This document shows positions 6,256 through 32,199 of a stretch of DNA of 64,000 bases, piece after piece (the first letter of the stretch is position 1; the number at the start of each line of letters is the position of its first letter). The stretch covers positions 14,756,001 to 14,820,000 of the forward strand of contig OZ176050.1 in NCBI GenBank assembly GCA_964247055.1, given 5' to 3'. The position numbers were made by a program, and so were the translations under genes. Source of the DNA: Paragordius varius. Lineage: Eukaryota; Animalia; Nematomorpha. The notes beneath the pieces were generated by a model. The model was not told the origin of the DNA. It ran no database searches and worked only from the letters and a program-made list of their open reading frames with translations.

Positions 6256-6344
6256 CAACTATGGATAATATCTTTTATATAAATGTATTTAATTTTCAGT
6301 ACTAAATAAAATTTAATATATATTATTTTAATTGTGTAATATAG

Positions 6345-8700: not shown

Positions 8701-9462
8701 AAAAGTGCATAGGTAAATCACTGAGAAACCGTATATCTTTATTATAATTTTGGATATTTATAAGATTTTAAGACCAATTCAATAATATATAAGTTTTTTG
8801 AGTTATTATTTGCAGTTTTCTAATAATTTTGTTAAATTGGAAAAAAAATTAGTTGGAAATAAAAAGTGGTTTTCGAATAAAAATTTTTATTTTTAAATGA
8901 ATTATATAATAAATAAAGAAAATTGGGTTAAAAAATAATAAAACAAAAAAATAAATGCAAATATTATGATTAATTAAAATAAAATTTTAAGGACCAAATT
9001 AAAATGTTCAATGACCGACTTGAAGTGTGTAAGGGCACTAAGTGCAAATTGCATATCAAAATATCTTAATTTAACTAAATGGTGCAAAACGAGCTTTCTG
9101 CTGAATTTACATAGATCTGAAAAAATTCATTGTGCTATTTAGAGTATAAATTATTATATTTGCCATAATAAAGTTCATAGCCTTCGAAAAATTATTTATT
9201 TGGCCCGTTTAATTTATTTGGTTAGTACGCCTGATTTAAACCATTAAAGCATTTCACTAATAAATTGACTTTTCTACAAAATTCTGAACCAGAGAAAATA
9301 AGAGGATTTCTAGTAAAGGGACGTGGATTAAAATAAGTTAAAAATGGAGCTTTTGAGAAAATATTAACCATATTATTATTAAATGACTCTGATAACAGCA
9401 AAGCATTAAAAACTGTAAAAATTAACATTATAACGCATGTAGAATTAAAATATATTTTTTAC

Positions 9463-9570
9463 CTTGAGATGATCTATTAGCGATTCCATTTACTGCCTTA
9501 TCTATATAGATATCAGATGATTTTTTAGTATTGTTAGATTCGATAGATTTGTTTGAGACAGAATCAAATT
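9463..9570 (-). other. Exon B copy in antisense orientation
   Basis: 108 nt, AG/GT intact on -: FDSVSNKSIESNNTKKSSDIYIDKAVNGIANRSSQ. Confidence 0.8.
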
Positions 9571-9832
9571 CTAATATAAATAGTTAGAATTCACATAATA
9601 CGTAAAATTTAATATAATAAATTGATGTTTTTAGTATAATATAATTTCTTAAATACAACAAAAAAGTAGTAGAACTTTAACCGAAATGTGTACTTCCAAA
9701 GTCTACATCTAAAACTGTTTTCATAATGTCATTTCACAAACACCTTTTAAACAAAAAACATTTTAATCATTATTAAAACCATGTGATGTTCATCAATCCT
9801 AACACTTCTTACCTATTGGCTTTATAAAATAT

Positions 9833-9952
9833 TATTGGATTCTCGGTCAAGTCAAAGGAATGCATCCGTTGACGAATTATTTCTTAATAGCACCGATATT
9901 CTCAAATCATTGGCTGATAAAGGAATTTCCCTAAATCATACAACACCTAAGG
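9833..9952 (+). pseudogene. Exon A copy lacking its acceptor AG
   Basis: aaaatat|TATTGG instead of aaaatag|GATTGG. Frame open: LDSRSSQRNASVDELFLNSTD...HTTPK. Confidence 0.75.
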
Positions 9953-10294
9953 GTTTAGATTGTTTAATATAACAATTGCATGTTTGGATGTGTACCATTG
10001 AATTAAATAGATAATGTCAAAATTAAATATAATTTGCAACATATTGTTAGAAAAGGTTGAAAAAGTGTAAGATTTATGTTGCATTTGGATAACACTTTTT
10101 ACTAAGAATGTGGCATTTGTTTTAAAGGTGTTCATGAAATGGCATTATGGAAACAGTTTTAGATATAGGCTTTGGAAGTAATTTCAATTAAAGTTCTACT
10201 ACTTTTTTGTTGTATTTAAGAAATTATATTATACTAAAAACAATTTATTTCATTAAATTTTACGTTTTATGTAAAATCTAACTATTTATATTAG

Positions 10295-10402
10295 AATTTG
10301 ATTCTGTCTCAAACAAATCTATCGTATCTAACAATACCAAAAAATCATCTGATATCAATATAGATAAGGCAGTAAATGGAATCGCTAATAAATCATCTCA
10401 AG
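10295..10402 (+). CDS. Exon B (intact)
   Basis: 108 nt, AG/GT: FDSVSNKSIVSNNTKKSSDINIDKAVNGIANKSSQ. Confidence 0.7.
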
Positions 10403-10816
10403 GTAAAAAATATATTTTAATTCTACATGCGTTATAATATTAATTTTTACAGTTTTTAATGCTTTGCTGTTATCAGAGTCATTTAATAATAATATGGTTA
10501 ATATTTTCTCAAAAGCTCCATTTTTAACTTATATTAATCCACGTCCCTTTACTAGAAATCCTCTTATTTTTTCTGGGTCAGAATTTTGTAGAAAAGTCAA
10601 TTTATTAGTGAAATGCTTTAATGGTTTAAATCAGGCGTACTAACCAAAAAATTAAACGGGCCAAATATATTTTTCGAGGGCTATGAACTTTATTATGGCA
10701 AATATAATATAAGCACATATTTATACTCTAAATAGCACAATGAATTTTTTCAGATCTATGTAAATTCAGCAGAAAGCTCGTTTTGCACCATTTAGTTAAA
10801 TTAAGATATTTTGATA

Positions 10817-11381
10817 TGCAATTTGCACTTCAATAGTGCCCTTACACACTTCAAGTCGGTCATTGAACATTTTAATTTGGTCCTTAAAATTTTATTTTAA
10901 TTAATCATAATATTTGCATTTATTTTTTTATTTTATTATTTTTTAACATTTTCTTTATTTATTATATAATTCATTTAAAAATAAAAAATTTTATTCGAAA
11001 ACCACTTTTTATTTCCAACTAATTTTTTTTCCAATTTAACAAAATTATTAGAAAACTGCAAATAATAACTCAAAAAACTTATATATTATTGAATTGGTCT
11101 TAAAATCTTATAAATACCCAAAATTATAATAAAGATATACGGTTTGTCAGTGATTAAAAGTTTATATGGATTTAAAATTTTTGTTAAATAATAGAAAATA
11201 GGTTAAAAACTATAAAATAGATGAATGATATACGATTTGATTGATAAAAATTAAAAACTAAACAAAATAGTCAAAGGACCAACTTGAATTGTTCAAGAAA
11301 TTTGAAGTGTTCCAGGACCAACTTGAAATATTCAAGGAACAATTTGAAATGTTCAAGGTCAGTCTTGAAATGCAAATGGTA
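10817..11381. mobile_element. TACCATTT MITE inserted in the hAT subterminal region (defines type II units)
   Basis: TA|TGCAATTTGCACTTCAA ... TTGAAATGCAAATGGTA|TA with 21-bp AAGGACCAACTTGAAATGTTC subrepeats. Absent from type I units. Confidence 0.75.
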
Positions 11382-11875
11382 TAACAACCACATTTTTTAA
11401 CAAATTTGGTTTCACCTCATGACAGGCCATCTTAATACGACGTCTATATTATCATAGGTAAGCGATATGTATGTATTTATGGCATTCTTCATTTTCAAAA
11501 ATGCCGTCTCTAACGTGTAGGTTGAGGGAATAACAGTTAGGAAAACTTGAGTACATTTTTTTATATTTTCATATTTATTTGACACATCTCGAAAAAACAC
11601 TAATCTTTCTTCGCTACGAATCTCCTTGAATATAGCCTCAAAATTAGAATCATTTTTAAAATCTATAAATTATTCCAAGATATGCGCCTGATCAAAACCG
11701 AAATGCTTAAGTTGCTTAAAATTCGATATATCCATATGCCCCACGGATTAGCAACGAGTCTTAAGCAATTTTTAATATTTCTTTATTATTGAAAAATTTC
11801 ATCTGCGGTAATAATCTCTTTATGAATTGTTTTAAGTTGGAAAATATAGGAGTGTTTTAATTATAAAATCTTGTT

Positions 11876-13446
11876 TCTATCATGTCGACTCTAGTCCTCA
11901 TTCATCCATTAGCACATTCATTAAAGTTTCAGAACTTGATCCCCCAATTTTACCTGATGAAGTTCAATACGCCTTAAAACAATTTTCATCCTCCAACTCC
12001 TTAGGTTACAATGATATCCCAATAAAAATTCTTCACACAATCCCCCTCTATTTCTAAACTGATCTTTTACAAAAAGTTTTTCAAACCTGTATTTGGCCGG
12101 ATGATTGGATTAAATCTTTTCTCCTACCCTTTTTTAAAAAGGGAAATCCCCATCTTTGTCAGAACTATAGAATGATCGCTATCACTAATAAACTATCTAA
12201 ACTTCTTCTCAAGATTATACTGAAAAGAATCTCATCCTCGTTGGACTATGAAATATCTGAGGTGCAGGCTGGCTTTAAAGCAAAGAGAAACACTACCAAT
12301 CATATAGTTAATCTTAATACAATAATTCGAAGATACAATGAATTTGGGAAAAGTCTATATTGCTGCTTTTTAGACTTCAGTATGGCATTTGATACAGTCA
12401 ACCACGACTGCCTATGGAGAATATTACGATCCTCTGGAGTTTCCCCGCACATAATACTCCTGCTTCAATCGCTGCATTCTAGACAAACAGCTGCGATTAA
12501 AACCCAATTCGGTCCCACCGACTGGTTTCCTATTCTCAGAGGTGTGAGACAATGATGTGTCCTTTCTCCCCTCCTATTTAACTTATACACAGAAACATTA
12601 ATACGCAATTGTAACTTTCCACAACATATTGGGGCACGGATCGGTGGTCTAACTATTTGCAATCTCCGGTACGCCAATGACACCATTCTCTTGTCAGAAT
12701 CCTACACGGACACGACCTATCTTTTAAATAATCTCACCATCGAAGCAAGTTTGATGGGTCTTAAGCTGAACCCAGCTAAATCTAAAATAATGATCCTAAA
12801 CGCTCCACAACTACCATTTACAATCAATAACTCCCCCATCGAACTAACCGATCACTGTAAATACCTAGGCTACATAATTACATCCGACGGTAGCTCGGAC
12901 CCCGACATACGAGCACGACTAGCATTGGGACGTGCTACTATGGGTAAACTGTCCAAAATTTAAAACTCGTCCGTCATAAGACTTCCAACTAAACTTGCCA
13001 TCCTGAAGGCGATGATATACCCCGTAGCAATTTATGGGTCCGAATCATGGATATGCAATTCCATTGACAAAGCTCGCATAAACTCTTTTCAAATGTGGTG
13101 CTTTCGAAAAATATTGAGAATCTCCTGGAAAGCCCACATCTCCAATTCTTACATACTCAAATTCATTAAACCCGAATTTTTACTTTACGATTTAATAACC
13201 TTTAAACAGCTAAAATATCTGGGTCATATCCTGCGATCCGACTCGCTAGAAAAAGGCATACTCTTTGGGTTGGTAGATGGCAACCGCAGAAGGGGCCCAC
13301 CCAAAAAGCGGTGGATCGATATGCTCAAATCAATAACAAATCTAACCTTTCATCAACTGTTGAGAGAAACACAGGATCGCCTAAAATGGAAACACTAATC
13401 TATGAGAAAGCCAAGAGTCAGTATATGACTAGCTTATAACAATAAC
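11876..13446 (+). mobile_element. 5'-truncated RTE (BovB-like) LINE, copy 1, disabled
   Basis: RT motifs FLDFSMAFD, GVRQ, YADD mutated to YAND, stops at ~12553 and 12961. 3' AAGAGTCAGTATATGACT hairpin plus (AAC/AAT) tail. Confidence 0.9.
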
Positions 13447-14477
13447 AATACTTCTTCAAAAGCAAATATTTGATTAGCAAATTAGATTATTATTTTGCGC
13501 CCTCGAAGACTTGTATTGAAAATACTAAGTTTATTAGTAATGTGGTGGGCTAATGACATCCATTCGTCACTTTTAACTTCCCAATGGAATTCCGTGTCTT
13601 AAAACAAAAAATCTATTTAGTACTTTGCTAAGGCATAATCATCACGCAGCGGTGTACAAAAAAATATAATAAAACTCACTGTGGACATCTCTAAGGTTTT
13701 TGAAATTACAGCGGTAGAATTTTCAGCCACGGATGTGGTTAACAATGTCCACAAGCGTTTTAATTACTGAATTTTGTGATTATATTTTACATGCGAAACC
13801 TTTCTGATGAATAAAGCAGTTAAAGGATAAAATATTTTGCAAATAGAAGAAATCCTTTGTTTATTCCAATCATAGAGGGACAGCCATCTATGCAGATCGA
13901 AACCACCATTTATTGGTCTTTCCCATTGCTCGTATACTCATTGTTTTGTGACATATTAAATGATTCGACAGATTTCCGTTTGACTAAATAAGAAATGGAG
14001 GGCATGTTGGAAATTTTCAGACCCAAAATTTGAGATGATTACTGATTGATATATATACATGATGATTATTTTTGCCAAACTCAAATTCTATGTGTTTGTA
14101 TAATGCCAGATAAACAAAATAGCGTCTGTATCAACTAATTGATTGCGCACTTTTCATTAGTCGTTTTTTAGTTAAACTGATAATGACTTATGACTAAACC
14201 TTGTTTACATAAAAGTGCATAGGTAAAATGTAATCATAATCAATAATCAGCTAAGGTTTTATTAAATTTTTAAAGATGCATCCGACCACCATTCATAGGT
14301 CGCAGTTATAATCTTTAATACCCATGTTGACTTAAAGTCCTTGTTCAAGTTGGTCCTGAACACCATATGTTTGTCCTTAGAACATTAAGTTAAAAACATT
14401 TTAATCTCCTTTCATTATTAAAACCATGTGATGTTCATCAATCCTAACACTTCTAATCTATTGGCTTTATAAAATAG

Positions 14478-14594
14478 GATTGGATTCTCGGTCAAGTGAA
14501 AGGAATGCCGTTGACGAATTATTTGTTAATAACACCGATATTCTCAAATCATTGGCTGATAAAGGAATTTCGCTAAATCATACAACATCCAAAG
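14478..14594 (+). CDS. Exon A (intact, 3-nt in-frame deletion)
   Basis: 117 nt, AG/GT: LDSRSSERNAVDELFVNNTD...HTTSK. Confidence 0.7.
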
Positions 14595-14981
14595 GTTTTT
14601 TGTTTACTGTAAGAATTGCATGTTTGGATGTGTACCATTGAATTAAATAGATAATGTCAAAATTAAATATAATTTGCAACATATTGTTAGAAAAGGCTAA
14701 AAAAGTGTATGATTTAATTTGTCTCCGTTAAAATGTTGCACTTGGATTAAAATGCTTTTGAATATAAAAAATGTGTCTTTGTTTAAAGGGTATTTATGAA
14801 AGGGCATTATAGAAACTGTTTTAGATATAGGCTATGGGAGTACACATTTAGGTTAAAGTTCTACTATTTTTAGTATTAGTATTTATATGAAATTATATTA
14901 TACTATAAACATCAAATTATATTATATTCATTTATCAAAAATAATTTTTGGTTTTATGTAAATTTTAACTATTTACATTAG

Positions 14982-15086
14982 AATTCGATTCTGCCTCAAA
15001 CCAATCTATCGAATCTAACAATACCAAAAAATCATCTGATATCAATATAGATAAGGCAGTAAATGGAATGACTAATACATCTCAAG
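14982..15086 (+). CDS. Exon B (intact, 3-nt in-frame deletion)
   Basis: 105 nt, AG/GT: ...DKAVNGMTNTSQ. Confidence 0.7.
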
Positions 15087-15318
15087 GTAAAAATTAAATT
15101 TTAATTTTACATATATGATGTTTATTACAGTTTTTAATGTTTTTTCCATTTGCTGTTATAAGAGTCATTTAACTAATCTTTCGTTAACATTTTATCAAAA
15201 AGTCCATTTTTAGCTTATATTAATCCACGTCCCTTTACTATGAAAACTTCTTGTTTTCTATGGTTCAGAATTTTGTAGAAAAGTCAATTTATTAGTGGAA
15301 TGCTTTGATGGTTTAAAT

Positions 15319-16850
15319 CAGTGGTACTCAATAAAAAAATTAGACGGGCCAAATAAAATATATTTTTTTTCGAGGGCCATTAACCTTTTTATGGCAAATA
15401 TTTTGACATATATGCACATATTTATACTGTAAGTCAGCATGATTTTTTTCGGATCCATGTGAATTCAGCTGAAAACTTGTTTAGCACCATTTATTTTATA
15501 AATTAAGATAGTTTCACCTCATGACAATCTCATCTTACTACGTCGTCCATATGATCATTGGTTAAGCGATATCTATGTATTCATGGAATACTTCATTTTT
15601 GAATATGCCGTCTCACACGTGTAAGTTGAGGGAAAAACAGTTAGCATAACTTGAGCACATTTTTTTTTATTTTTATATATATTTGACACATCTTGCCAAA
15701 ACTCTACATATCTCTCTTCTCTACGATTCTTCTTGAATATAGCCTCAAAATTGGAATCATTTTTAAAATTTACAAATTTTTCCATGATATGCGCTTGATC
15801 AAAACCGGAATGCTCAAGATGCTTAATAATGGATATATCCATATGCCACCTATTTTCAAAGAGTTTTAACCAATTTTTAATATTTTATTCTTGAAACTTA
15901 GATAAAAAGATAAATGATTGGTCGTTATTATTAATTGAATATCCGCGGTAAACCATATTCTCTTCATAAATCGTTTTTAGTGTTGGAAAATATAGGAATG
16001 TTTTATTTATTAATTCTTGTTTATATATTATTAATTTTTCTTGTAAAGCAAATATTTGTTTTGCAAATTGGGTTATTATTTTGCTCCCTTGAAGACTTGT
16101 GTTGAATATACTAAGTTTATAAGTATTGTCGCAAAGGTAGGCTAATAAAACCTTCCATTTGTCATCATAAATTTCCTCGTCAACCTTTCTGTTATCTTTT
16201 AATAATAATAGATTTTCATTTTTTAAAACAAAAAATCTTTTAATACTTTGCTAAGACTTAGTCATCAGCATCACACAGCAGTGGACTAAAGAATATAATC
16301 AAACACACTGTCTTTCATAAGGTTTGTAAATTTACGGCGGTTGAATTCTCTGCCAGGATGTGGTTACCAATGTCCACAACCGTTTTAATTACTGAATTGA
16401 GTGATTAACTTTTACACGCGTAACCTTGCTGATGAATAAAGCAGTGAAAAGATAAAATATTTTGCAAATCATATGTGCTTTTCAAAAGAGAAAGAAATCC
16501 TTTGTTTATTCCAATCATAAAGGGACAGCCATCTGTGCAGATTGAAACCACCTGTTTATTAGTCTTTCCCATTGCTTGTATACTCAGTGTTTTGTGACAT
16601 ATTATATGATCCGGCCGATTGCCGTTTGATGAAATAAGAAATGGAGCGCATGTTGGATATTTTCAGACCCAAAATTTGAGATGATTACTGATTTATATAA
16701 ATTATACGATATTTTTAGGCAATATCAAATTCTGTGAGTTTGTATAATGTCAGATAAACATAGCGTCTGTATCAACTAATTCATTGCGCACTTTTCGTTA
16801 GTCGTTTTTTAGTTAAACTGATGATGACTTAGGACTAAACCTTGTTTACA
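15319..16850 (-). mobile_element. hAT/mariner remnant, type I
   Basis: CAGTGGTACTCAA end. ORF 15573-15842 hAT dimerisation motif. Confidence 0.85.
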
Positions 16851-17607
16851 TAAAAGTGCATAGGTAAATCACTGAGAAACCGTATATCTTTATTATAATT
16901 TTGGATATTTATAAGATTTTAAGACCAATTATATAATATATAAGTTTTTTGAGTTATTATTTGCAGTTTTCTAATAATTTTGTTAAATTGGAAAAAAAAT
17001 TAGGAAATAAAAAGTGGTTTTCGAATAAAAATTTTTATTTTTAAATGAATTATATAATAAATAAAGAAAATTGGGTTAAAAAATAATAAAACAAAAAAAT
17101 AAATGCAAATATTATGATTAATTAAAATAAAATTTTAAGGACCAAATTAAAATGTTCAATGACCGACTTGAAGTGTGTAAGGGCACTAAGTGCAAATTGC
17201 ATATCAAAATATCTTAATTTAACTAAATGGTGCAAAACGAGCTTTCTGCTGAATTTACATAGATCTGAAAAAATTCATTGTGCTATTTAGAGTATAAATT
17301 ATTATATTTGCCATAATAAAGTTCATAGCCTTCGAAATATTTATTTGGCCCGTTTAATTTATTTGGTTAGTACGCCTGATTTAAACCATTAAAGCATTTC
17401 ACTAATAAATTGACTTTTCTACAAAATTCTGAACCAGAGAAAATAAGAGGATTTCTAGTAAAGGGACGTGGATTAAAATAAGTTAAAAATGGAGCTTTTG
17501 AGAAAATATTAACCATATTATTATTAAATGACTCTGATAACAGCAAAGCATTAAAAACTGTAAAAATTAACATTATAACGCATGTAGAATTAAAATATAT
17601 TTTTTAC

Positions 17608-17714
17608 CTTGAGATGATTTATTAGCGATTCCATTTACTGCCTTATCTATATTGATATCAGATGATTTTTTGGTATTGTTAGATACGATAGATTTGTTTG
17701 AGACAAATCAAATT
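17608..17714 (-). pseudogene. Antisense exon B copy with a 1-nt deletion
   Basis: 107 nt; gatttgtc vs gattctgtc. Confidence 0.7.
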
Positions 17715-18056
17715 CTAATATAAATAGTTAGATTTTACATAAAACGTAAAATTTAATGAAATAAATTGTTTTTAGTATAATATAATTTCTTAAATACAAC
17801 AAAAAAGTAGTAGAACTTTAATTGAAATTACTTCCAAAGCCTATATCTAAAACTGTTTCCATAATGCCATTTCATGAACACCTTTAAAACAAATGCCACA
17901 TTCTTAGTAAAAAGTGTTATCCAAATGCAACATAAATCTTACACTTTTTCAACCTTTTCTAACAATATGTTGCAAATTATATTTAATTTTGACATTATCT
18001 ATTTAATTCAATGGTACACATCCAAACATGCAATTGTTATATTAAACAATCTAAAC

Positions 18057-18176
18057 CCTTAGGTGTTGTATGATTTAGGGAAATTCCTTTATCAGCCAAT
18101 GATTTGAGAATATCGGTGCTATTAAGAAATAATTCGTCAACGGATGCATTCCTTTGACTTGACCGAGAATCCAATA
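18057..18176 (-). pseudogene. Antisense exon A copy (no acceptor AG)
   Basis: Reverse complement of 9833-9952, with the same acceptor loss. Confidence 0.8.
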
Positions 18177-18438
18177 ATATTTTATAAAGCCAATAGGTAA
18201 GAAGTGTTAGGATTGATGAACATCACATGGTTTTAATAATGATTAAAATGTTTTTTGTTTAAAAGGTGTTTGTGAAATGACATTATGAAAACAGTTTTAG
18301 ATGTAGACTTTGGAAGTACACATTTCGGTTAAAGTTCTACTACTTTTTTGTTGTATTTAAGAAATTATATTATACTAAAAATATCAATTTATTATATTAA
18401 ATTTTACGTATTATGTGAATTCTAACTATTTATATTAG

Positions 18439-18546
18439 AATTTGATTCTGTCTCAAACAAATCTATCGAATCTAACAATACCAAAAAATCATCTGATATC
18501 AATATAGATAAGGCAGTAAATGGAATCGCTAATAAATCATCTCAAG
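18439..18546 (+). CDS. Exon B (intact)
   Basis: 108 nt, AG/GT: FDSVSNKSIESNNTKKSSDINIDKAVNGIANKSSQ. Confidence 0.7.
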
Positions 18547-18770
18547 GTAAAAAATATATTTTAACATGTGTTATAATGTTAATTTATTCAGTTTTTAATG
18601 CTTTGCTGTTATCAGAGTCATTTAATAATAATATGGTTAATATTTTCTCAAAAGCTCCATTTTTAACTTATATTAATCACCGTCCCTTTACTAGAAATCC
18701 TCTTATTTTCTCTGGTTCAGAATTTTGTAGAAAAGTCAATTTATTAGTGAAATGCTTTAATGGTTTAAAT

Positions 18771-20716
18771 CAGGCGTACTAACCAAAAAATTAAACGGGC
18801 CAAATATATTTTTCGAGGGCTATGAACTTTATTATGGCAAATATAATATAAGCACATATTTATACTCTAAATAGCACAATGAATTTTTTCAGATCTATGT
18901 AAATTCAGCAGAAAGCTCGTTTTGCACCATTTAGTTAAATTAAGATATTTTGTATGCAATTTGCACTTCAATAGTGCCCTTACACACTTCAAGTCGGTCA
19001 TTGAACATTTTAATTTGGTCCTTAAAATTTTATTTTAATTAATCCTAATATTTGCATTTATTTTTTTATTTTATTATTTTTTAACCTAATTTACTTTATT
19101 TATTATATAATTCATTTAAAAATAAAAATTTCTATTCGAAAACCACTTTTTATTTCAAACTATTTTTTTTTCCAATTTAACAAATTTATTAGAAAAACTG
19201 TAAATAATAACTCAAAAAACTTATATATTATTGAATTGGTCTTAAATCTTATAAATATCCAAAATTATAATAAAGATATACGGTTTGTCAGTGATTAAAA
19301 GTTTATATGGATTTAAAGTTTTTGTTAAATAATAGAAAATAGGTTAAAAACTATAAAATAGATGAATGATATACGATTTGATTGATAAAAATTAAAAACT
19401 AAAGAAAATAGACAAAGGACCAACTTGAATTGTTCAAGAAATTTGAAGTGTTCAAGGACCAACTTAATATGTTCAAGGAACAACTTGAAATGTTCAAGGT
19501 CAGTCTTGAAATGCAAATGGTATAACAACCACTAATTTTTAACAAATTTGGTTTCACCTCATGACAGGCTCATCTTAATACGACGTCTATATTATCATAG
19601 GTAAGCGATATGTATGTATTTATGGCATTCTTAATTTTTGAATATGCCGTCTCTAACGTGTAAGTTGAGGGAATAACAGTTAGGAAAACTTGAGTACATT
19701 TTTTTATATTTTCATATTTATTTGACACATCTCGAAAAAACACTAATCTTTCTTCGCTACGAATCTCCTTGAATGTAGCCTCAAAAATGCTTAAGTTGCT
19801 TAAAATTCGATATATCCATATGCCCCACGGATTAGCAACGAGTCTTAAGCAATTTTTAATATTTCTTATTATTGAAAAATTTCATCTGCGGTAATAATCT
19901 CTTTATGAATTGTTTTAAGTTGGAAAATATAGGAGTGTTTTAATTATAAAATCTTGTTTATATATTATTAATACTTCTTCAAAAGCAAATATTTGATTAG
20001 CAAATTAGGTTATTATTTTGCTCCCTTGAAGACTTGTATTGAAAATACTAAATATATTAGTAATGTGGTAGGCTAATGACCTCCATTCGCCACTATAAAT
20101 TTCCCAAAAAATCCGTGTCTTAAAACAAAAAATCTATTTAGTACTTTGCTAAGGCATAATCATTACGCAGCGGTGTACAAAAAAATATAATAAAACTCAC
20201 TGTGGACATCTTTAAGGTTTTTGAAATTACAGCGGTAGAATTCTCAGCCACGGATGTGGTTAACAATGTCCACAAGCGTTTTAATTACTGAATTTTGTGA
20301 TTATATTTTACATGCGAAACCTTTCTGATGAATAAAGCAGTTAAAGGATAAAATATTTTGCAAATAGAAGAAATCCTTTGTTTATTCCAATCATAGAGGG
20401 ACAGCCATCTATGCAGATCGAAACCACCATTTATTGGTCTTTCCCATTGCTCGTATACTCATTGTTTTGTGACATATTAAATGATTCGACAGATTTCCGT
20501 TTGACGAAATAAGAAATGGAGGGCATGTTGGAAATTTTCAGACCCAAAATTTGAGATGATTACTGATTTATATAAATAATACGATATATTTAGGCAAACT
20601 CAAATTCTATGTGTTTGTATAATGTCAGATAAACAAAATAGCGTTTGTATTAACTAATTGTACTTTTCGTTAGTCGTTTTTAGTTAAACCGATAATGACT
20701 TATGACAAAGCTTGTA
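18771..20716 (-). mobile_element. hAT/mariner remnant, type II, empty RTE site
   Basis: Contains the MITE but reads aatcttgttatatattattaatacttc at ~19950 with no LINE. Confidence 0.85.
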
Positions 20717-20987
20717 ATAAAAGTGCATAGGTAAAATGTAATCATAATAACAATAATCAGCTAAGGTTATATTAAATATTTAAAGATGCATCCGACCACC
20801 ATTCATAGGTCGCAGTTATAATCTTTAATACCCATTTTGACTTAAAGTCCTTGTTCAAGTTGGTCCTGAACACCATATGTTTGTCCTTAGAACATTAAGT
20901 TAAAAACATTTTAATCTCATTTCATTAATAAAACCATGTGATATTCATCAATCCTAACACTTTAAACCTATTGCCTTTATATTATAG

Positions 20988-21107
20988 GATTGGATTCTCG
21001 GTCAAGTGAAAAGAATGCATCCGTTGACGAATTATTTGTTAATAATACCGATATTCTCAAATCATTGGCTGATAAAGGAATTTCGCTAAATCATACAACA
21101 CCCAAAG
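20988..21107 (+). CDS. Exon A (intact)
   Basis: 120 nt, AG/GT: LDSRSSEKNASVDELFVNNTDILKSLADKGISLNHTTPK. Confidence 0.7.
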
Positions 21108-21490
21108 GTTTAGTTTGTTTAATATAACGATTGCATGTTTGGATGTGTACCATTGAATTATATAGATAATGTCAAAATTAAATATAATTTTCAACATATT
21201 GTTAGAAACGGTTGAAAAAGTGTATGATTTAATTTGTCTCCGTTAAAATGTTGCACTTGGATTAAAATGCTTTTGAATATAAAAAATGTGTCATTTGTTT
21301 AAAGAGTTTTTATGAAATGGCATTATAGAAACTGTTTTAGATATAGGCTATGGGAGTACACATTTAGGTTAAAGTTCTACTATTTTTAGTATTAGTATTT
21401 ATATGAAATTATATTATACTATAAACAACAAATTATTTATTATCATTATCTAATTTTTGGTTTTATGTAATATTTAACTATTTACATTAG

Positions 21491-21576
21491 AAATCGATTC
21501 TGCCTCAAACCAATCTATCGAATCTAACAATACCAAATAAATAAGGCAGTAAATGGAATGGCTAATACATCTCAAG
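21491..21576 (+). pseudogene. Exon B with an internal deletion and stop
   Basis: 86 nt; ACC AAA TAA. Confidence 0.75.
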
Positions 21577-21807
21577 GTAAAAAATAAATTTTAATTTTAC
21601 ATATATGATGTTAATTAGAGTTTTTAATGTTTTTCCATTTGCTGTTATAAGACTCATTTAACTAATCTTTCGTTAATATTTTATCAAAAAGTACATTTTT
21701 TACTTATATTAATCCACGTCCCTTTACTATGAAATCTTTTTTTTTTCTATGGTTCAGAATTTTGTAGAAAAGTCAATTTATTAGTGGAATGCTTTAATGG
21801 TTTAAAT

Positions 21808-23312
21808 CAGTGGTACTCAATAAAAAAAATTAGACGGGCCAAATAAAATATGTTTTTTTCGAGGGCCATTAACCTTATTATGGCAAATATATTTGACATA
21901 TATGCACATATTTATACTCTGAATCAGCACAATGTTTCGCCATGTAAATTCAGGTGAAAACTCGTTTAGCACCATTTAGTTTAAAAATTAAGATATTTCG
22001 TTATAACCAATTTGACAAATTTAGTTTCGCCTCATGACAGGCTCATCTTACTACTTCGTCCATATGATCATCGGTTAAGCGATATCTATGTATTCATGGC
22101 ATACTTCATTTTTGTACCGTCTCACACGTGTAAGTTGAGGGGAAAACAGTTAGCATAACTTGAGCACATTTTTTTATATTTTTATATATATTTGACACAT
22201 CTTGCCAAAACTCTACATATCTCTCTTCTCTACGATTCTTCTTGAATATAGCCTCAAAATTGGAATCATTTTTAAAATTTACAAATTTTTCAATCATATG
22301 CGCCTGATTAAAACCGAAATGCTCTAGTTTAATAATGGATATATCCATATGCCACCTATTTTCAAAGAGTTTTAACCAATTTTAAATATTTAATTCTTGA
22401 AATCTCATTTAATATCCGCCGTAACTTCCATATTCTCTTCATGAAATGTTTTAAGTGTTGGAAAATATAGGAGTTGTTTATTTATAAAATCTTGTTAACA
22501 TATATTTAATTTTTCTTCAAATAAAAATATTTGATTAGATTGGGTTACTATTTTGCCCCAAAGAATTGTATTGAATATACTAATTTTATAAGTAATGACG
22601 CAAAGGTGGCTCAAAAAACCCTGCATTTGTCATTATAAATTTCCTCGTCAAACTTTTTGTTATATTTTAAAAATAATAGAATTTCTTGTCTTAAAACAAA
22701 AAATCTGCCAATACTTTGCTAAGACTTAGTCATCAGCATCACACAGCAATGGACTAAAGAATATAATCAAACACACTGTCTTTCATAAGGTTTGTAAATT
22801 TACGGCGGTTGAATTCTCTGCCAGGATGTGGTTACCAATGTCCACAACCGTTTTAATTAGTGAATTGAGTGATTAACTTTTACACGCGTAACCTTGCTGA
22901 TGAATAAAGCAGTGAAAAGATAAAATATTTTGCAAATCATATGTGCTTTTCAAAAGAGAAAGAAATCCTTTGTTTATTCCAATCATAGAGGGACAGCCAT
23001 CTGTGCAGATTGAAACCACCTGTTTATTAGTCTTTCCCATTGCTTGTATACTCAGTGTTTTGTGACATATTATATGATCCGGCCGATTGCCGTTTGATGA
23101 AATAAGAAATGGAGCGCATGTTGGATATTTTCAGACCCAAAATTTGAGATGATTACTGATTTATATAAATAATACGATATTTTTTGGCAAACTCAAATTC
23201 TATGAGTTTGTATAATGTCAGATAAACATAGCGTCTGTATCAACTAATTGATTGCCCCCTTGTTAGTCATTTTTAGTAAAACTGATAATAACTTATGTCC
23301 AAACCTTGTTAA
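21808..23312 (-). mobile_element. hAT/mariner remnant, type I
   Basis: CAGTGGTACTCAA end; ORF 22106-22348. Confidence 0.85.
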
Positions 23313-23585
23313 CATAAAAGTGCATAGGTAAAATGTAATCATAATAACAATAAATCAGCTAAGGTTTTATTAAAATTTTAAAGATGCATCCGGCCACCAT
23401 TCATAGGTCGCAGTTATAATCTTTAATACCCATTTTGACTTAAGGTCCTTGTTCAAGTTGGTCCTGAACACCATATGTTTGTCCTTAGAACATTAAGTTA
23501 AAAACATTTTAATCTCATTTCATTAATAAAACCATGTGATATTCATCAATCCTAACACTTTAAACCTATTGCCTTTATAATATAA

Positions 23586-23705
23586 GATTGGATTCTCGGT
23601 CAAGTCAAAGGAATGCATCCATTGACAAATTATTTCTTAATAGCACCGATATTCTCAAATCATTGGCTGATAAAGGAATTTCCCTAAATCATACAACACC
23701 TAAGG
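23586..23705 (+). pseudogene. Exon A with acceptor AG>AA
   Basis: tataa|GATTGG. The shifted AG would give 119 nt and a frameshift. Confidence 0.7.
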
Positions 23706-24093
23706 GTTTAGTTTGTTTAATATAACAATTGCATGTTTGGATGTGTACCATTGAAATAAATAGATAATGTCAAAATTAAATATAATTTGCAACATATTGT
23801 TAGAAAAGGCTAAAAAAGTGTATGATTTAATTTGTCTCCGTTAAAATGTTGCACTTGGATTAAAATGCTTTTGAATATAAAAAATGTGTCATTTGTTTAA
23901 AGAGTTTTTATGAAATGGCATTATAGAAACTGTTTTAGATATAGGCTATGTGAATACACATTTAGGTTAAAGTCCTACTACTTTTTAGTATTTGTATTAT
24001 ATGAAATTATATTATGCTATAAACATCAAATTATATTATTATCATTTATTAAAATTTTTTTGGTTTTATGTAAATTTTAACTATTTACATTAG

Positions 24094-24198
24094 AATTCGA
24101 TTCTGCCTTAAACCAATCTATCGAATCTAACAATACCAAAAAATCCTCTGATATCAATAATAAGGCAGTAAATGGAATGGCTAATAAATCATCTCAAG
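24094..24198 (+). CDS. Exon B (intact, 3-nt in-frame deletion)
   Basis: 105 nt: FDSALNQSIESNNTKKSSDINNKAVNGMANKSSQ. Confidence 0.7.
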
Positions 24199-24422
24199 GT
24201 AAAAAATAAATTTTAATTATACATATATGATGTTAATTACAGTTTTTAATGCTTTTTCCATTTGCTGTTATAAGAGTCATTAATCTTTCAGTAATATTTT
24301 TTCAAAAACTCCATTTTTAACTTATATTAATCCACGTCTTTTTACTATATAATCTTCTTGTTTTGTCTAATTCTGAATTTTGTAGAAAAGTCAATTTATT
24401 AGTGGAATGCTTTAGTTTAAAT

Positions 24423-25995
24423 CAGTGGTACTTAATAAAAAAAATTAGACGGGCCAAATAAAATATATTTTTTTTCGAGGGCCATTAAATTTTTAATGGC
24501 AAATATTTTGACATATATATATGCACATATTTATACTCTCTATCAGCACAATGAATTTTTTCGGATCCATGTATATTCAGCTAAAAACTAGCACCATTTA
24601 GTTTATAAATTAGGATATTTCGATAACAAAATTTATTTTGTTATTAACCAATAATTTTTGACAAATTTAGTTTCGCCTCATGAGAGGCTCATCTTACTGC
24701 GTCGTCCATATGATAATCGGTTAAGCGATATCTATGTATTCATGGAATACTTCATTTTTGAATATGCCGTCTCACACGTGTAAGTTGAGGGAAAAACAGT
24801 TAGCATAACTTGAACACATTTTTTTATATTTTCATATTTATTTGACATATCTTGCCAAAACTCTACAAATCTCATTTCGATTCTTCTTGTATATAGCCTC
24901 AAAATTGGAATCATTTTTAAAATCTACAAATTTTTCCATGATATGCGTCTGATCAAAACCGGAATGCTAAGTTGCTTAATAATGGATATATCCATATGCC
25001 ACCTATTTTCAAAGAGTTTTAACCAATTTATATTTTATTCTTGAAACTTACATCAAAAGGTAAATGATTGTCTATTATTAATTTAATATCCGCGGTAAAT
25101 CCCACATTCTCTTCATGAATTGTTTTTAGTGTTGGAAAAAGTAGGATTATTTATAAAATCTTGTTTATATATAATTAATTTTTCTTGTAAACAAATATAT
25201 ATATAGCAAATTGTGTAATTATTTTGCTATCTTGAAGACTTGTGTTGAATATCCTAAGTTTAGAAGTAATGTCGCAAAGGTAATCTAATAAAACCCTCCA
25301 TTTGTCTTCATAAATTTCGTCGTCAAACTTTCTGTTATCTTTTATTAATAATGGAATTTCATTTTTTAAAACATAAAATCTCTTAATACTTTGCTAAGAC
25401 TTAGTCATCAGCATCACACAGCAGTATACAAAAGTATATTACCAACTCACTGTGGACATCTTTGATAAGGTTTGTAATTTTACGGTGGTTGAATTCTCTG
25501 CCAGGATGTGGTTACCAATGTCCACAACCGTTTTAATTACTGAATTGAGTGATTAACTTTTACACGCGTAACCTTGCTGATGAATAAAGCAGTGAAAAGA
25601 TAAAATATTTTGCAAATCATATGTGCTTTTCAAAAGAGAAAGAAATCCTTTGTTTATTCCAATCATAGAGGGACAGCCATCTGTGCAGATTGAAACCACC
25701 TGTTTATTAGTCTTTCCCATTGCTTGTATACTCAGTGTTTTGTGACATATTATATGATCCGGCCGATTGCCGTTTGATGAAATAAGAAATGGAGCGCATG
25801 TTGGATATTTTCAGACCCAAAATTTGAGATGATTACTGATTTATATAATTATACGATATTTTTAGGCAATATCAAATTCTGTGAGTTTGTATAATGTCAG
25901 ATAAACATAGCGTCTGTATCAACTAATTCATTGCGCACTTTTCGTTAGTCGTTTTTTAGTTAAACTGATGATGACTTAGGACTAAACCTTGTTTA
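24423..25995 (-). mobile_element. hAT/mariner remnant, type I variant
   Basis: CAGTGGTACTTAA end; ORF 24732-24914. Confidence 0.85.
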
Positions 25996-26774
25996 CATAA
26001 AAGTGCATAGGTAAATCACTGAGAAACCGTATATCTTTATTATAATTTTGGATATTTATAAGATTTTAAGACCAATTATATAATATATAAGTTTTTTGAG
26101 TTATTATTTGCAGTTTTCTAATAATTTTGTTAAATTGGAAAAAAAATTAGTTTGAAATAAAAAGATGTTTTCGAATAAAATTTTTATTTTAAATGAATAA
26201 ATATATAATAAATAAAGAAAATTAGGTTAAAAAATGATAAAACAAAAAAATAAATGCAAATATTATGATTAAATAAAATAAAATTTTAAGGACCAAATTA
26301 AAATGTTCAATGACCGACTTGAAGTGTGTAAGGGCACTATTGAAGTGCAAATTGCATATCAAAATATCTTAATTTAACTAAATGGTGCAAAACGAGCTTT
26401 CTGCTGAATTTACATGGATCTTAAAAAATTCATTGTGCTATTTAGAGTATAAATATGTGCTTATATTATATTTGCCATAATAAAGTTCATAGCCTATGAA
26501 AAAATATTTATTTGGCCTGTTTAATTTTTTTGGTTAGTACGCCTGATTTAAACCATTAAAGCATTACACTAATAAATTGACTTTTCTACAAAATTCTGAA
26601 CCAGAGAAAATAAGAGGATTTCTAGTAAAGGGACGGTGATTAATATAAGTTAAAAATGGAGCTTTTGAGAAAATATTAACCATATTATTATTAAATGACT
26701 CTGATAACAGCAAAGCATTAAAAACTGTAAAAATTAACATTATAACGCATGTAGAATTAAAATATATTTTTTAA

Positions 26775-26882
26775 CTTGAGATGATTTATTAGCGATTCCA
26801 TTTACTGCCTTATCTATATTGATATCAGATGATTTTTTGGTATTGTTAGATTCGATAGATTTGTTTGAGACAGAATCAAATT
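26775..26882 (-). pseudogene. Antisense exon B with donor GT>TT
   Basis: ttaacttgag on +. Confidence 0.75.
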
Positions 26883-27224
26883 CTAATATAAATACTTAGA
26901 TATTACATAAAACGTAAAATTTAATGAAATAAATTGTTTTTAGCATAATATAATTTCTTAAATACAACAAAAAAGTAGTAGAACTTTAATTGAAATTACT
27001 TCCAAAGCCTATATCTAAAACTGTTTCCATAATGCCATTTCATGAACACCTTTAAAACAAATGCCACATTCTTAGTAAAAAGTGTTATCCAAATGCAACA
27101 TAAATCTTACACTTTTTCAACCTTTTCTAACAATATGTTGCAAATTATATTTAATTTTGACATTATCTATTTAATTCAATGGTACACATCCAAACATGCA
27201 ATTGTTATATTAAACAATCTAAAC

Positions 27225-27344
27225 CCTTAGGTGTTGTATGATTTAGGGAAATTCCTTTATCAGCCAATGATTTGAGAATATCGGTGCTATTAAGAAATAA
27301 TTCGTCAACGGATGCATTTCTTTCACTTGACCGAGAATCCAATA
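27225..27344 (-). pseudogene. Antisense exon A (no acceptor AG)
   Basis: LDSRSSERNASVDELFLNSTD... Confidence 0.8.
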
Positions 27345-27606
27345 ATATTTTATAAAGCCAATAGGTTAGAAGTGTTAGGATTGATGAACATCACATGGTT
27401 TTAATAATGAAATGAGATTAAAATGTTTTTTGTTTAAAAGGTGTTTGTGAAATGACATTATGGAAACAGTTTTAGATGCAGACTTTAGAAGTACACATTT
27501 CGAAGTTCTACTACTTTTTTGTTGTATTTAAGAAATTATATTATGCTAAAAACAATTTATTTCATTAAATTTTACGTTTTATGTAATATCTAAGTATTTA
27601 TATTAG

Positions 27607-27714
27607 AATTTGATTCTGTCTCAAACAAATCTATCGAATCTAACAATACCAAAAAATCATCTGATATCAATATAGATAAGGCAGTAAATGGAATCGCTAA
27701 TAAATCATCTCAAG
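27607..27714 (+). pseudogene. Exon B with donor GT>TT
   Basis: CTCAAG|ttaaaa; frame open. Confidence 0.75.
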
Positions 27715-27943
27715 TTAAAAAATATATTTTAATTCTACATGCGTTATAATGTTAATTTTTACAGTTTTTAATGCTTTGCTGTTATCAGAGTCATTTAATA
27801 ATAATATGGTTAATATTTTCTCAAAAGCTCCATTTTTAACTTATATTAATCACCGTCCCTTTACTAGAAATCCTCTTATTTTCTCTGGTTCAGAATCTTG
27901 TAGAAAAGTCAATTTATTAGTGAAATGCTTTAATGGTTTAAAT

Positions 27944-30900
27944 CAGGCGTACTAACCAAAAAAATTAAACGGGCCAAATATATTTTTTCGAAGGCTATGA
28001 ACTTTATTATGGCAAATATAATAATTTATACTCTAAATAGCACAATGAATTTTTTCAGATCCATGTAAATTCAGCCCAAAGCTCATTTTGCACCATTAAG
28101 TTTAATTACGATATTTTGATATGCAGTTTGCACTTCAATAGTGTCCTTACACACTTCAAGTCGGTCATTAAACATTTTAATTTGGTCCTTAAAATTTTAT
28201 TTTAATTAATCATAATATTTGCATTTATTTTTTTGTTTTATTATTTTTTAACCCAATTTTCTTTTATATAATTCATTTAAAAATAAAAATTTTTATTCGA
28301 AAACCACTTTTTATTTCCAACTAATTTTTTTTCCAATTTAACAAAATTATTAGAAAACTGCAAATAATAACTCAAAAAACTTATATATTATTGAATTGGT
28401 CTTAAAATCTTATAAATATCCAAAATTATAATAAAGATATACGGTTTGTCAGTGATTAACTGTTTATATGGATTTAAAATTTTTGTTAAATAATAGAAAA
28501 TAGGTTTAAAACTATAAAATAGATGAATGATATACGATTTGATTGATAAAAATTAAAAAAAACAAAATAGTCAAGAGACCAACTTGAATTGTTCAAGAAA
28601 TTTGAAGTGTTCAAGAACCAACTTGAAATGTTCAAGGAACAACTTGAAATGTTCAAGGTCAATCTTGAAATGCAAATGGTATAACAACCACTAATTTTTA
28701 ACAAATTTGGTTTCACCTCATGACAGGCTCATCTTAATACGACGTTTATATTATCATAGGTAAGCGACATGTATGTATTTATGGCATTCTTAATTTTTGA
28801 ATATGCCGTCTCTAACGTGTAAGTTGAGGGAATAACAGTTAGGAATACTTGAGTACATTTTTTTATATTTTCATATTTATTTGACACATCTCGAAAAAAC
28901 ACTAATCTTTCTTCGCTACGAATCTCCTTGAATATAGCCTCAAAATTGGAATCATTTTTAAAATCTATAAATTTTTCCAAGATATGCGCCTGATCAAAAC
29001 CGAAATGCTTAAGTTGCTTAAAATTCGATATATCCATATGCCCCACGGATTAGCAACGAGTCTTAAGCAATTTTTAATATTTCTTTATTGAAAAATTTCA
29101 TCTGCGGTAATAATCTCTTTATGAATTGTTTTAAGTTGGAAAATATAGGAGTGGTTATATAAAATCTTGTTTCTATCATGTCGACTCTAGTCCTCATTCA
29201 TCCATTAGCACATTCATTAAAGTTTCAGAACTTGATCCCCCAATTTTACCTGATGAAGTTCAATACGCCTTAAAACAATTTTCATCCTCCAACTCCTTAG
29301 GTTACAATGATATCCCAATAAAAATTCTTCACACAATCCCCCTCTATTTCTTAACTGATCTTTTACAAAAAGTTTTTCAAACCTGTATTTGGCCGGATGA
29401 TTAGATTAAATCTTTTCTCCTACCCTTTTTTAAAAAGGGAAATCCCCATCTTTGTCAGAACTATAGAATGATCGCTATCACTAATAAACTATCTAAACTT
29501 CTTCTCAAGATTATACTGAAAAGAATCTCATCCTCGTTGGACTATGAAATATCTGAGGTGCAGGCTGGCTTTAAAGCAAAGAGAAACACTACCAATCATA
29601 TAGTTAATCTTAATACAATAATTCGAAGATACAATGAATTTGGGAAAAGTCTATATTGCTGCTTTTTAGACTTCAGTATGGCATTTGATACAGTCAACCA
29701 CGACTGCCTATGGAGAATATTACGATCCTCTGGAGTTTCCCCGCACATAATACTCCTGCTTCAATCGCTGCATTCTAGACAAACAGCTGCGATTAAAACT
29801 CAATTCGGTCCACCGACTGGTTTCCTATTCTCAGAGGTGTGAGACAAGGATGTGTCCTTTCTCACCTCCTATTTAACTTATACACAGAAACATTAATACG
29901 CAATTGTAACTTTCCACAACATATTGGGGCACGGATCGGTGGTCTAACTATTTGCAATCTCCGGTACGCCGATGACACCATTCTCTTGTCAGAATCCTAC
30001 ACGGACATGACCTATCTTTTAAATAATCTCACCATCGAAGCAAGTTTGATGGGTCTTAAGCTGAACCCAGCTAAATCTAAAATAATGATCCTAAACGCTC
30101 CACAACTACTATTTACAATCAATAACTCCCCCATCGAACTAACCGATTGAAAATATCTAGGCTACATAATTACATCCGACGGTACCTCGGATCCCGACAT
30201 ACAAGCACGACTAGCATTGGGACGTGCTACTATGGGTAAATTGTCCAAAATTTGGAACTCGTCGGTCATAAGACTTTCAACCAAACTTGCCATCCTGAAG
30301 GCGATGATATACCCCGTAGCAATTTATGGGTCCGAATCATGGATATGCAATTCCATTGACAAAGCCCGCATAAACTCTTTTCAAATGTGGTGCTTTCGAA
30401 AAATATTGAGAATCTCCTGGAAAGCCCACATCTCCAATTCTTACATACTCAAATTCATTAAACCCGAATTTTTACTTTACGATTTAATAACCTTTAAACA
30501 GCTAAAATATCTGGGTCATATCCTGCGATCCGACTCGCTAGAAAAAGGCATACTCTTTGGGTTGGTAGATGGCAACCGCAGAAGGGGCCGACCCAAAAAG
30601 CGGTGGATCGATGTGCTCAAATCAATAACAAATCTAACCTTTCATCAACTGTTGAGAGAAACACAGGATCGCCTAAAATGGAAACACTAATCTATGAGAA
30701 AGCCAAGAGTCAGTATATGACTAGCTTATAACAACACAATACTTCTTCAAAAGCAAATATTTGATTAGCAAATTAGGTTATTATTTTGCGCCCTCGAAGA
30801 CTTGTATTGAAAATACTAAGTTTATTAGTAATGTGGCTTAGGTAGGCTAATGAAATCCATTCGTCACTTTTAACTTCCCAATGGAATTCCGTGTCTTAAA

Positions 30901-31446
30901 ACAAAAAAACTATTTAGTACTTTGCTAAGGCATAATCATCACGCAGCGGTGTACAAAAAAATATAATAAAACTCACTGTGGACATCTTTAAGGTTTTTGA
31001 AATTACAGCGGTAGAATTCTCAGCCACGGATGTGGTTAACAATGTCCACAAGCGTTTTAATTACTGAATTTTGTGATTATATTTTACATGCGAAACCTTT
31101 CTGATGAATAAAGCAGTTAAAGGATAAAATATTTTGCAAATAGAAGAAATCCTTTGTTTATTCTAATCATAGAGAGACAGCCATCTATGCAGATCGAAAC
31201 CACCATTTATTGGTCTTTCCCATTGCTCGTATACTCATTGTTTTGTGACATATTAAATGATTCGACAGATTTCCGTTTGACGAAATAAGAAATGGAGGGC
31301 ATGTTGGAATTCAGACCCAAAATTTGAGATGATTACTGATTTATATAAATAATACGATATAACTCAAATTCTATGTGTTTGTATAATGTCAGATAAACAT
31401 AGCGTCTGTATCAACTAATTGATTGCGCACTTTTCATTAGTCGTTC
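27944..31446 (-). mobile_element. hAT/mariner remnant, type II with RTE fragment
   Basis: ORF 28729-29046 hAT dimerisation motif. Deletion at ~31446 removes the mariner TIR. Confidence 0.85.
29172..30737 (+). mobile_element. 5'-truncated RTE (BovB-like) LINE, copy 2
   Basis: Same junctions as copy 1; YADD present; frameshift ~29810 and deletion ~30148. Confidence 0.9.
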
Positions 31447-31592
31447 TTAAGGTCCTTGTTCAAGTTGGTCCTGAACACCATATGTTTGTCCTTAGAACAT
31501 TAAGTTAAAAACATTTTAATCTCATTTCATTAATAAAACCATGTGATATTCATCAATCCTAACACTTTAAACCTATTACCTTTATAATATAG

Positions 31593-31711
31593 GATTGGAT
31601 TCTCGGTCAAGTCAAAGGAATGCATCCTAGACAAATTATTTGTTAATAATACCGATATTCTCAAATCATTGGCTGATAAAGGAATTTCGCTAAATCATAC
31701 AACATCCAAAG
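31593..31711 (+). pseudogene. Exon A with a 1-nt deletion and stop
   Basis: 119 nt; GCA TCC TAG. Confidence 0.75.
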
Positions 31712-32091: not shown

Positions 32092-32199
32092 AAATCGATT
32101 CTGCCTCAAACCAATCTATCGAATCTAACAATACCAACAAATCATCTGATATCAATATAGATAAGGCAGTAAATGGAATCGCTAATAAATCATCTCAAG
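32092..32199 (+). CDS. Exon B (intact)
   Basis: 108 nt: IDSASNQSIESNNTNKSSDINIDKAVNGIANKSSQ. Confidence 0.7.

What the first reader, a model, noticed from the sequence alone, without database searches (positions are those of the whole stretch)
8719..28454. Invertible exon cassette: exon A flips between 1-kb inverted repeats that each contain exon B
Seen: three structures (8719-11152, 16870-19293, 26017-28454) share the same outer junction (aaagtgcataggtaaat|cactg) and ~1.04-kb inverted arms. The ~360-bp spacer holding exon A is sense in the first and antisense in the other two. Diagnostic variants locate a crossover. Outer left-arm variants (gggcactaagtgc deletion, TYF-type site) stay on the left in structures 1 and 2. 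Inner variants (exon B ATC GTA vs ATC GAA; intron aatataataaattgatg vs aatgaaataaattg) swap sides with the spacer. This places the exchange at about 9340-9540 and its mirror position. Inference: homologous recombination between the arms has flipped exon A. If this recurs in the soma or in populations, it is a DNA-inversion switch for exon inclusion in a eukaryotic repeat-protein gene. Caveat: the invertible A copies have lost their acceptor AG, so the switch may be a historical event or now silent.
Basis: partly seen in the sequence, partly recalled or inferred. Interest (0 to 1): 0.85.

Follow-up and report, generated by a model that had tools for sequence, protein, structure and literature searches.

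The report
Exon flipped once between inverted duplicates
In a decaying tandem exon array of a horsehair-worm genome, an old accidental inverted duplication let one small segment flip over once by ordinary recombination, but the exon it carries was already unspliceable, so this looks like a rearrangement scar and not a working gene switch.

Summary
Three structures share two junctions and have 1.02-1.05 kb inverted arms; the exon-A spacer is sense in S1 and antisense in S2 and S3. Between S1 and S2, 17 inner sites swap sides and 8 outer sites stay, in two clean blocks (P about 2e-6), so the exchange lies at 9333-9539 and its mirror 10326-10532. The origin was one inverted-duplication event (2-nt microhomologies, about 165 bp deleted) in a unit whose exons sat between two inverted MITEs; 'CACTG' lies inside a MITE and is no transposon end or recombinase site. 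Unequal exchange then copied the structure; S1 is the derived flip, and S3 shows a 394-bp arm-to-arm conversion. A switch is not supported: all three invertible A copies share the lost acceptor, so the loss predates the flip; the arms are predicted to bury sense exon B in either orientation; 6/10 A and 4/13 B copies are broken; dN/dS-like ratio about 0.74, not distinguishable from neutral. No RNA or spanning reads were available; the host gene is unidentified. It works like palindrome spacer inversion, a known kind. The scan noted similar inverted-arm arrays elsewhere in this genome (unchecked).

The parts
5463..43479 (+). Tandem array of about ten 2.5-3 kb units, each with exon A, exon B and hAT/MITE debris in the introns
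19..114 (+). Candidate upstream exon E0 of the same gene (96 nt, phase 1-1, AG/GT, GC 0.39); inferred, no RNA
6345..6464 (+). Exon A of the first, ancestral-type unit (120 nt, phase 1-1, intact)
6857..6964 (+). Exon B of the first unit (108 nt, phase 1-1, intact)
5755..6262 (+). MITE copy M1 upstream of exon A (cut down to about 165 bp in all later units)
8719..9755 (-). S1 left arm (inverted copy of the right arm); outer junction after 8718 with 2-nt AA microhomology
9463..9570 (-). Antisense exon B in S1 left arm (open frame, three private substitutions)
9333..9539 (.). Exchange zone of the flip, left arm
9756..10115 (+). S1 spacer, sense orientation; inner new junction at 9755/9756 with 2-nt AA microhomology
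9833..9952 (+). Exon A in S1 spacer, acceptor lost (AT)
10116..11152 (+). S1 right arm
10295..10402 (+). Sense exon B in S1 (Val variant; same lineage as the antisense B of S2)
10326..10532 (.). Exchange zone, mirror position in right arm
10815..11383 (-). MITE copy M2, same family as M1 and inverted to it; the arm ends inside it at 11152
16870..17893 (-). S2 left arm; holds antisense exon B 17608-17714 with a 1-nt deletion
17894..18253 (-). S2 spacer, antisense; exon A at 18057-18176, acceptor lost
18254..19293 (+). S2 right arm; sense exon B 18439-18546 intact (Glu variant)
26017..27061 (-). S3 left arm; antisense exon B 26775-26882, donor lost
27062..27428 (-). S3 spacer, antisense; exon A at 27225-27344, acceptor lost
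27429..28454 (+). S3 right arm; sense exon B 27607-27714, donor lost (GT to TT, copied to both arms)
26593..26986 (.). 394-bp arm-to-arm conversion tract in S3 (exact inverted match to 27503-27896)
33977..38896 (+). Unit U4: unrearranged layout (X, 165-bp segment, spacer with intact exon A 34246, right arm with exon B 34714 and MITE M2), interrupted by a LINE at about 35476-38809

Best explanation
A historical rearrangement scar. Step 1 (junctions shown, mechanism inferred): in one unit of a tandem two-exon array, laid out X-d-S-R with inverted MITE copies bracketing the exons, a single replication template switch or staggered-break repair replaced d+S by an inverted copy of S+R, giving X-R'-S'-R. 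Step 2 (shown by shared junctions): unequal exchange in the array made three copies; exon A had already lost its acceptor. Step 3 (exchange shown; direction inferred): in the S1 lineage one homology-driven exchange between the arms, by crossover or by a template switch during repair, turned the spacer and the inner 216+ arm columns back to sense. Step 4 (shown): arms keep converting each other and other units (S3 tract). The flip does not restore exon A; its only possible coding effect is to swap which exon B copy reads sense (Glu to Val at one codon). The 1-kb pre-mRNA hairpin probably causes both exons of these units to be skipped (inferred from folding only).
For: Same two junctions with 2-nt microhomology in all three copies, unrearranged unit U4 present. 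Two-block swap, P = 1.8e-6. S1 flipped matches S2 with 3 mismatches + 3 gaps over 8700-10300 while flanks differ by several percent. S3 is the outgroup for the spacer (3 substitutions and a 7-bp indel that S1 and S2 share) and is antisense; the U4 right arm matches the S2 right arm in columns 79-423 (2 + 2 differences); both make antisense the older state. All invertible A copies lack AG. Arms predicted to pair over about 1000 bp, MFE near -1500 against -476 for an ordinary unit, with B splice sites inside the stem. 6/10 A and 4/13 B copies broken; exon divergence A 0.064 against intron 0.059; 10 synonymous to 26 non-synonymous alleles, P = 0.27 for excess of synonymous. Known parallels: PMC5453318, PMC1885836, PMC8327919.
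Against: No reads span any structure, so fixation of each orientation is untested. Exon B is less diverged (0.044) than its downstream intron (0.089), so some constraint may remain. S3 shows a patchy pattern in columns 601-960 that could record further flips. No RNA was available to confirm skipping.
Confidence: 0.75

Rival explanations
1. Recurrent but unregulated toggling: the structures flip now and then in the germ line and both orientations segregate in populations as neutral inversion polymorphisms, as in primate X palindromes.
For: The flip is recent (676-bp exact inverted match between S1 and S2) and arms still exchange (394-bp tract in S3). In S3 the left arm equals U4 in columns 841-960 (0 differences) while the right arm equals L1 (1 difference), which a double flip would give.
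Against: Only one flip has a clean signature; the S3 pattern lies in a high-copy MITE and is equally explained by conversion. Arms are only 1 kb and 94-95% alike, and the innermost 78 columns differ at 10 sites, so exchange is infrequent.
Confidence: 0.12
2. Assembly flip: S1 is really antisense and the assembler crossed between arms in the 93-bp stretch that is identical in both.
For: Sequence alone cannot exclude it: an unflipped S1 would be a near twin of S2 over 1.6 kb. A 1333-bp exact repeat elsewhere in the array shows that very recent copying or polishing effects exist here.
Against: The piece is over 11 Mb long (one search gives a note 11.2 Mb upstream), which implies long reads that span 2.4 kb easily (inference). 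Arms are 5-6% diverged, so the structures are not amplification chimeras. S1 has private variants and its own flanks. Another individual holds 58% of the words of 6200-11600, so the array itself is real.
Confidence: 0.07
3. Functional DNA-inversion switch that controls which exon (A, or which copy of B) enters the mRNA in somatic cells.
For: Both exons are phase 1-1, so any subset stays in frame; the exchange does swap the sense and antisense B copies; a weak in-frame cryptic acceptor at 9923 could give a 30-nt piece of A in sense orientation only.
Against: A acceptor dead before the flip; B copies differ by one codon; S3 has lost the B donor in both arms; four intact A and several intact B copies sit in ordinary units of the same array, so a switch would change little; no conserved recombination site; near-neutral decay.
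Confidence: 0.04
4. The structure is a Pack-type or fold-back transposon with CACTG termini that captured the exons and moved as a unit.
For: Ends read CACTG...CAGTG with AT on both sides.
Against: The sequence runs on across the right end as one MITE (alignment to M1); unit U4 has the same CAGTG without a left arm; all three copies sit at the same position of the unit with about 165 bp deleted, not at new target sites.
Confidence: 0.02

Closest known systems
Palindrome spacer inversion with arm-to-arm gene conversion (primate X palindromes, PMC8327919; FLNA-EMD and F8 inversions cited there)
   Same: Inverted arms flank a spacer; recombination within one chromatid inverts the spacer; conversion homogenises the arms.
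   Different: Arms here are 1 kb and 94-95% alike, not 8-140 kb and over 99%; they lie inside one gene's introns and exons in a tandem array; no sign of preservation by selection.
Four-point template-switch events, types 1-3-4-2 and 1-4-3-2 (PMC5453318); spacer inversion and arm homogenisation by template switching in yeast (PMC8604942)
   Same: One switch-and-return creates an inverted repeat with an inverted spacer; later switching inverts spacers and homogenises arms.
   Different: Those studies concern short-range events; here the copied piece is about 1.4 kb.
Inversions with inverted duplications from staggered breaks in Drosophila (PMC1885836)
   Same: Inverted segment flanked by inverted copies of formerly single sequence, no long homology at the breakpoints.
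   Different: Here the inverted spacer is only 360 bp, one side is a deletion, and the new repeats later served to flip the spacer back.
Flip/flop (FF1) mating-type switching of Ogataea polymorpha and other yeasts (PMC6692504, PMC5720833)
   Same: A region between one pair of inverted repeats is turned over by recombination in the repeats.
   Different: There the flip is reversible, induced and moves functional genes between expressed and silenced positions; here the flipped exon is unspliceable either way and one event is recorded.

Membership tests
Palindrome spacer inversion by arm-to-arm recombination | Inverted homologous arms flanking a spacer | tested here: met
Palindrome spacer inversion by arm-to-arm recombination | Spacer in opposite orientations between copies with the exchange point inside the arms | tested here: met
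   17 against 8 sites in two runs
Palindrome spacer inversion by arm-to-arm recombination | Arm-to-arm gene conversion | tested here: met
   394-bp exact tract in S3
Palindrome spacer inversion by arm-to-arm recombination | Recurrence (toggling) among individuals | not testable with these tools
   only short-read contigs served
Template-switch or staggered-break inverted duplication | Two new junctions with little or no homology that explain the structure from an unrearranged unit | tested here: met
   2-nt microhomology at both junctions; U4 layout
Template-switch or staggered-break inverted duplication | Which of the two mechanisms acted | tested here: inconclusive
   both give the same product
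Programmed DNA-inversion switch (yeast FF1; bacterial invertons) | Orientation changes the functional product | tested here: not met
   exon A acceptor lost in all invertible copies; B copies differ by one codon, (sequence test only)
Programmed DNA-inversion switch (yeast FF1; bacterial invertons) | Both orientations at one locus in a population of cells, at high or induced frequency | not testable with these tools
   no spanning long reads
Programmed DNA-inversion switch (yeast FF1; bacterial invertons) | Arms or recombination sites kept near-identical | tested here: not met
   arms 94-95% alike, 10 differences in the inner 78 columns
CACTA/Pack-type or fold-back transposon | Termini are element ends with target-site duplication at independent insertion sites | tested here: not met
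   end lies inside a MITE; same position in every copy, with a deletion

The most novel reading that the evidence does not exclude
The arms drive recurrent somatic or germ-line flips that change the mRNA of an animal gene, by swapping which exon B copy is sense or by exposing a 30-nt remnant of exon A: a DNA-inversion switch of exon use in an animal.
Probability: 0.04. Interest if true: 0.85.

Novelty: new member of a known kind. Interest (0 to 1): 0.27.

Why it matters
As it stands it is a clean small case study: birth of an intragenic inverted repeat, its spread through a tandem array, one flip-back with a mappable exchange zone and arm conversion, all readable in one window of a poorly studied phylum. 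It shows that 1-kb, 94% alike arms suffice for spacer inversion. It would matter much more if both orientations were found at one locus with different transcripts, since from my own knowledge no inversion switch of exon inclusion is established in animals; the evidence here points against that.

Tried and rejected
(1) Transposon with CACTG ends: rejected. (2) A/B as N-terminal cassette exons of the downstream Semaphorin-5: considered because its first Sema exon (51207) opens in phase 1 and the Gordionus orthologue starts upstream of iRhom; dropped after finding a signal-peptide exon candidate with a phase-1 donor at 46245-46380, which completes Sema5 without the array. (3) Host-gene identity: exon A profile against 1.84 billion proteins gave only summed short hits of about 10 bits per stretch (ankyrin-repeat proteins and others); a profile built from those ankyrin hits scores exon A above 500 shuffles, but that test is circular; the atlas gave weak ankyrin look-alikes below 0.9; PDB gave chance-level parvalbumin and enolase matches; Pfam nothing above cut-off. 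Unresolved. No A, B or E0 match in the 22-kb Gordionus locus. (4) RNA: the three candidate transcriptome or related runs laid did not even cover the iRhom gene at 85%, so they say nothing on expression. Reads were laid on this test, so the junctions were not checked in other individuals. (5) Sema5 tail search found no homologue; P0002 was an unrelated beetle protein. (6) A double flip in S3 is suggested but not separable from conversion.
Full report
Setting. The window is AT-rich eukaryotic DNA. Its intronless inactive-rhomboid gene (47860-50508) has its best hit in the nematomorph Gordionus sp. (60% over residues 380-882), and the order iRhom then Semaphorin-5 is the same in the Gordionus locus. 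The genome is therefore most likely another horsehair worm (inference). Positions 5463-43479 hold a tandem array of about ten units. Each has a 120-nt exon A and a 108-nt exon B, both phase 1-1 with AG/GT ends in the first unit and richer in GC than their introns. Introns carry hAT and MITE debris and LINE insertions. Exon status rests on sequence only; no matching RNA was served.

Observation. The three structures are as described. Arms are 1024-1045 bp and 94-95% alike. Ordinary units read X, d (about 165 bp), S (spacer with exon A), R (rest of the intron, exon B, next intron). The structures read X, R', S or S', R: d is gone and R is duplicated in reverse. All three share both new junctions, each with a 2-nt AA microhomology. 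Unit U4 (33977-38896) has the same right arm without a left arm and shows the unrearranged layout.

The flip. In the arm alignment, S1 and S2 have 17 informative events in columns 8-216 that cross sides with the spacer and 8 in columns 424-1049 that stay on their side, with no interleaving (P = 1.8e-6). The exchange lies at 9333-9539 and 10326-10532, starting inside exon B. Flipping S1 in silico in that zone leaves 3 mismatches and 3 gaps against S2 over 8700-10300, while the flanks differ by several percent; 9628-10303 is an exact inverted match to 17706-18381. The event is therefore recent relative to the birth of the arms, whose innermost 78 columns differ at 10 sites. Direction: S3 is the outgroup for the spacer and is antisense, and the right arm of U4 tracks the right arm of S2 in columns 79-423, so S1 is most simply the derived, flipped-back copy. 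In columns 217-423 both S1 arms are of the S2-left type, as expected for a conversion tract at a crossover or for a template switch during repair; the two cannot be told apart. S3 has a 394-bp exact arm-to-arm tract that copied a donor-destroying change into both B copies. A patchy swap in S3 columns 601-960 may record two more flips but lies largely in a high-copy MITE and is equally explained by conversion.

Origin. CACTG is not an element end. The right arm ends at 11152 inside a MITE (10815-11383) that aligns through that point with an inverted family member upstream of exon A (5755-6262; 380 of 486 aligned bases). The two MITEs bracket the exon pair and may have promoted fold-back, but the junctions are not at homologous positions of the two copies, so this is a suggestion only. 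X-R'-S'-R is the product expected of a 1-3-4-2 template switch (PMC5453318) or of staggered-break repair (PMC1885836).

Is it a switch? Four points speak against it. First, exon A has the same AG-to-AT loss in S1, S2 and S3, so it was dead before the flip; of all AGs from 9500 to the donor only one, at 9923, gives an open in-frame piece, 30 nt long. Second, the arms are predicted to pair over about 1000 bp in either orientation, with both splice sites of sense exon B in the stem (a prediction on naked RNA). Third, the array is decaying: 6 of 10 A copies and 4 of 13 B copies are broken, two of them (A 31593, B 21491) by frameshifts inside intact splice sites; exon A diverges as fast as its intron; 10 synonymous and 26 non-synonymous alleles give a ratio near 0.74, not distinguishable from neutrality (P = 0.27). 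The test is weak with so few sites, and exon B is about half as diverged as its downstream intron. Fourth, intact A and B copies remain in ordinary units, so inverting one would change little. What the flip did do is exchange the B copies: the Val-type copy is sense in S1 and antisense (since frameshifted) in S2.

Host gene. Not identified. The array with exon E0 (19-114) belongs to a gene that starts upstream of the window. Searches of exon A gave only chance-level or circular leads.

Artefact. The three structures are not amplification chimeras or simple haplotype duplicates: arms are diverged and relationships between units are mosaic. A related individual (X1, about 1-7% different in the longer iRhom contigs) holds 58% of the words of 6200-11600. 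A local assembly flip of S1 cannot be excluded from sequence alone, but is unlikely in a multi-megabase long-read assembly (inference).

Comparison. It works like spacer inversion and arm conversion in palindromes (PMC8327919) and yeast inverted repeats (PMC8604942), at 1-kb scale inside a gene. It shares geometry with flip/flop mating-type switches (PMC6692504) but fails the features that could be tested: no functional output of orientation and no near-identity of arms. Verdict: real, well-resolved, historical; a new member of a known kind; interest 0.27.

Noticed in passing
window 46245-46380, 47860-50508, 51207-63837: Semaphorin-5-like gene with a signal-peptide exon candidate at 46245-46380; the intronless iRhom gene would sit nested on the same strand in its first intron. 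In Gordionus the annotated Sema gene also spans iRhom.
   Followed up: partly
window 35488-38484 (minus strand): LINE with an uninterrupted 998-aa ORF (endonuclease, weak PHD/C1-like finger inside the RT region, reverse transcriptase), inserted in the MITE of unit U4 at about 35476-38809; looks young.
   Followed up: partly
window 11880-13440, 29176-30730, 39615-41160: A 5'-truncated LINE fragment copied three times with the array units; useful as a lineage marker linking S1, S3 and U4 downstream flanks.
   Followed up: partly
window 23394-24726 and 42003-43335: 1333-bp exact direct match between two units 18.6 kb apart: very recent conversion or a polishing effect.
   Followed up: no
window 5920-6336: Present only in the first unit; its deletion in all later units brings MITE-derived sequence next to the exon A acceptor, so their branch-point region is transposon-derived.
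   Followed up: partly
window 5755-6262, 10815-11383, about 51440-51690, 52690-52940: High-copy MITE-like repeats with 21-bp subterminal units; very high contig depth at the latter two places in run X1.
   Followed up: partly
window 43992-44008: Possible short terminal exon after the array (good acceptor, phase 1 reading ends DNPTF then stop); unverified.
   Followed up: no
window 1963-2348: GC-rich element with inverted ends inserted in an (AT)n tract.
   Followed up: no
window 6390-6464: The second half of exon A resembles helix 2 and the turn of an ankyrin repeat in two searches, but only at weak or circular significance.
   Followed up: partly
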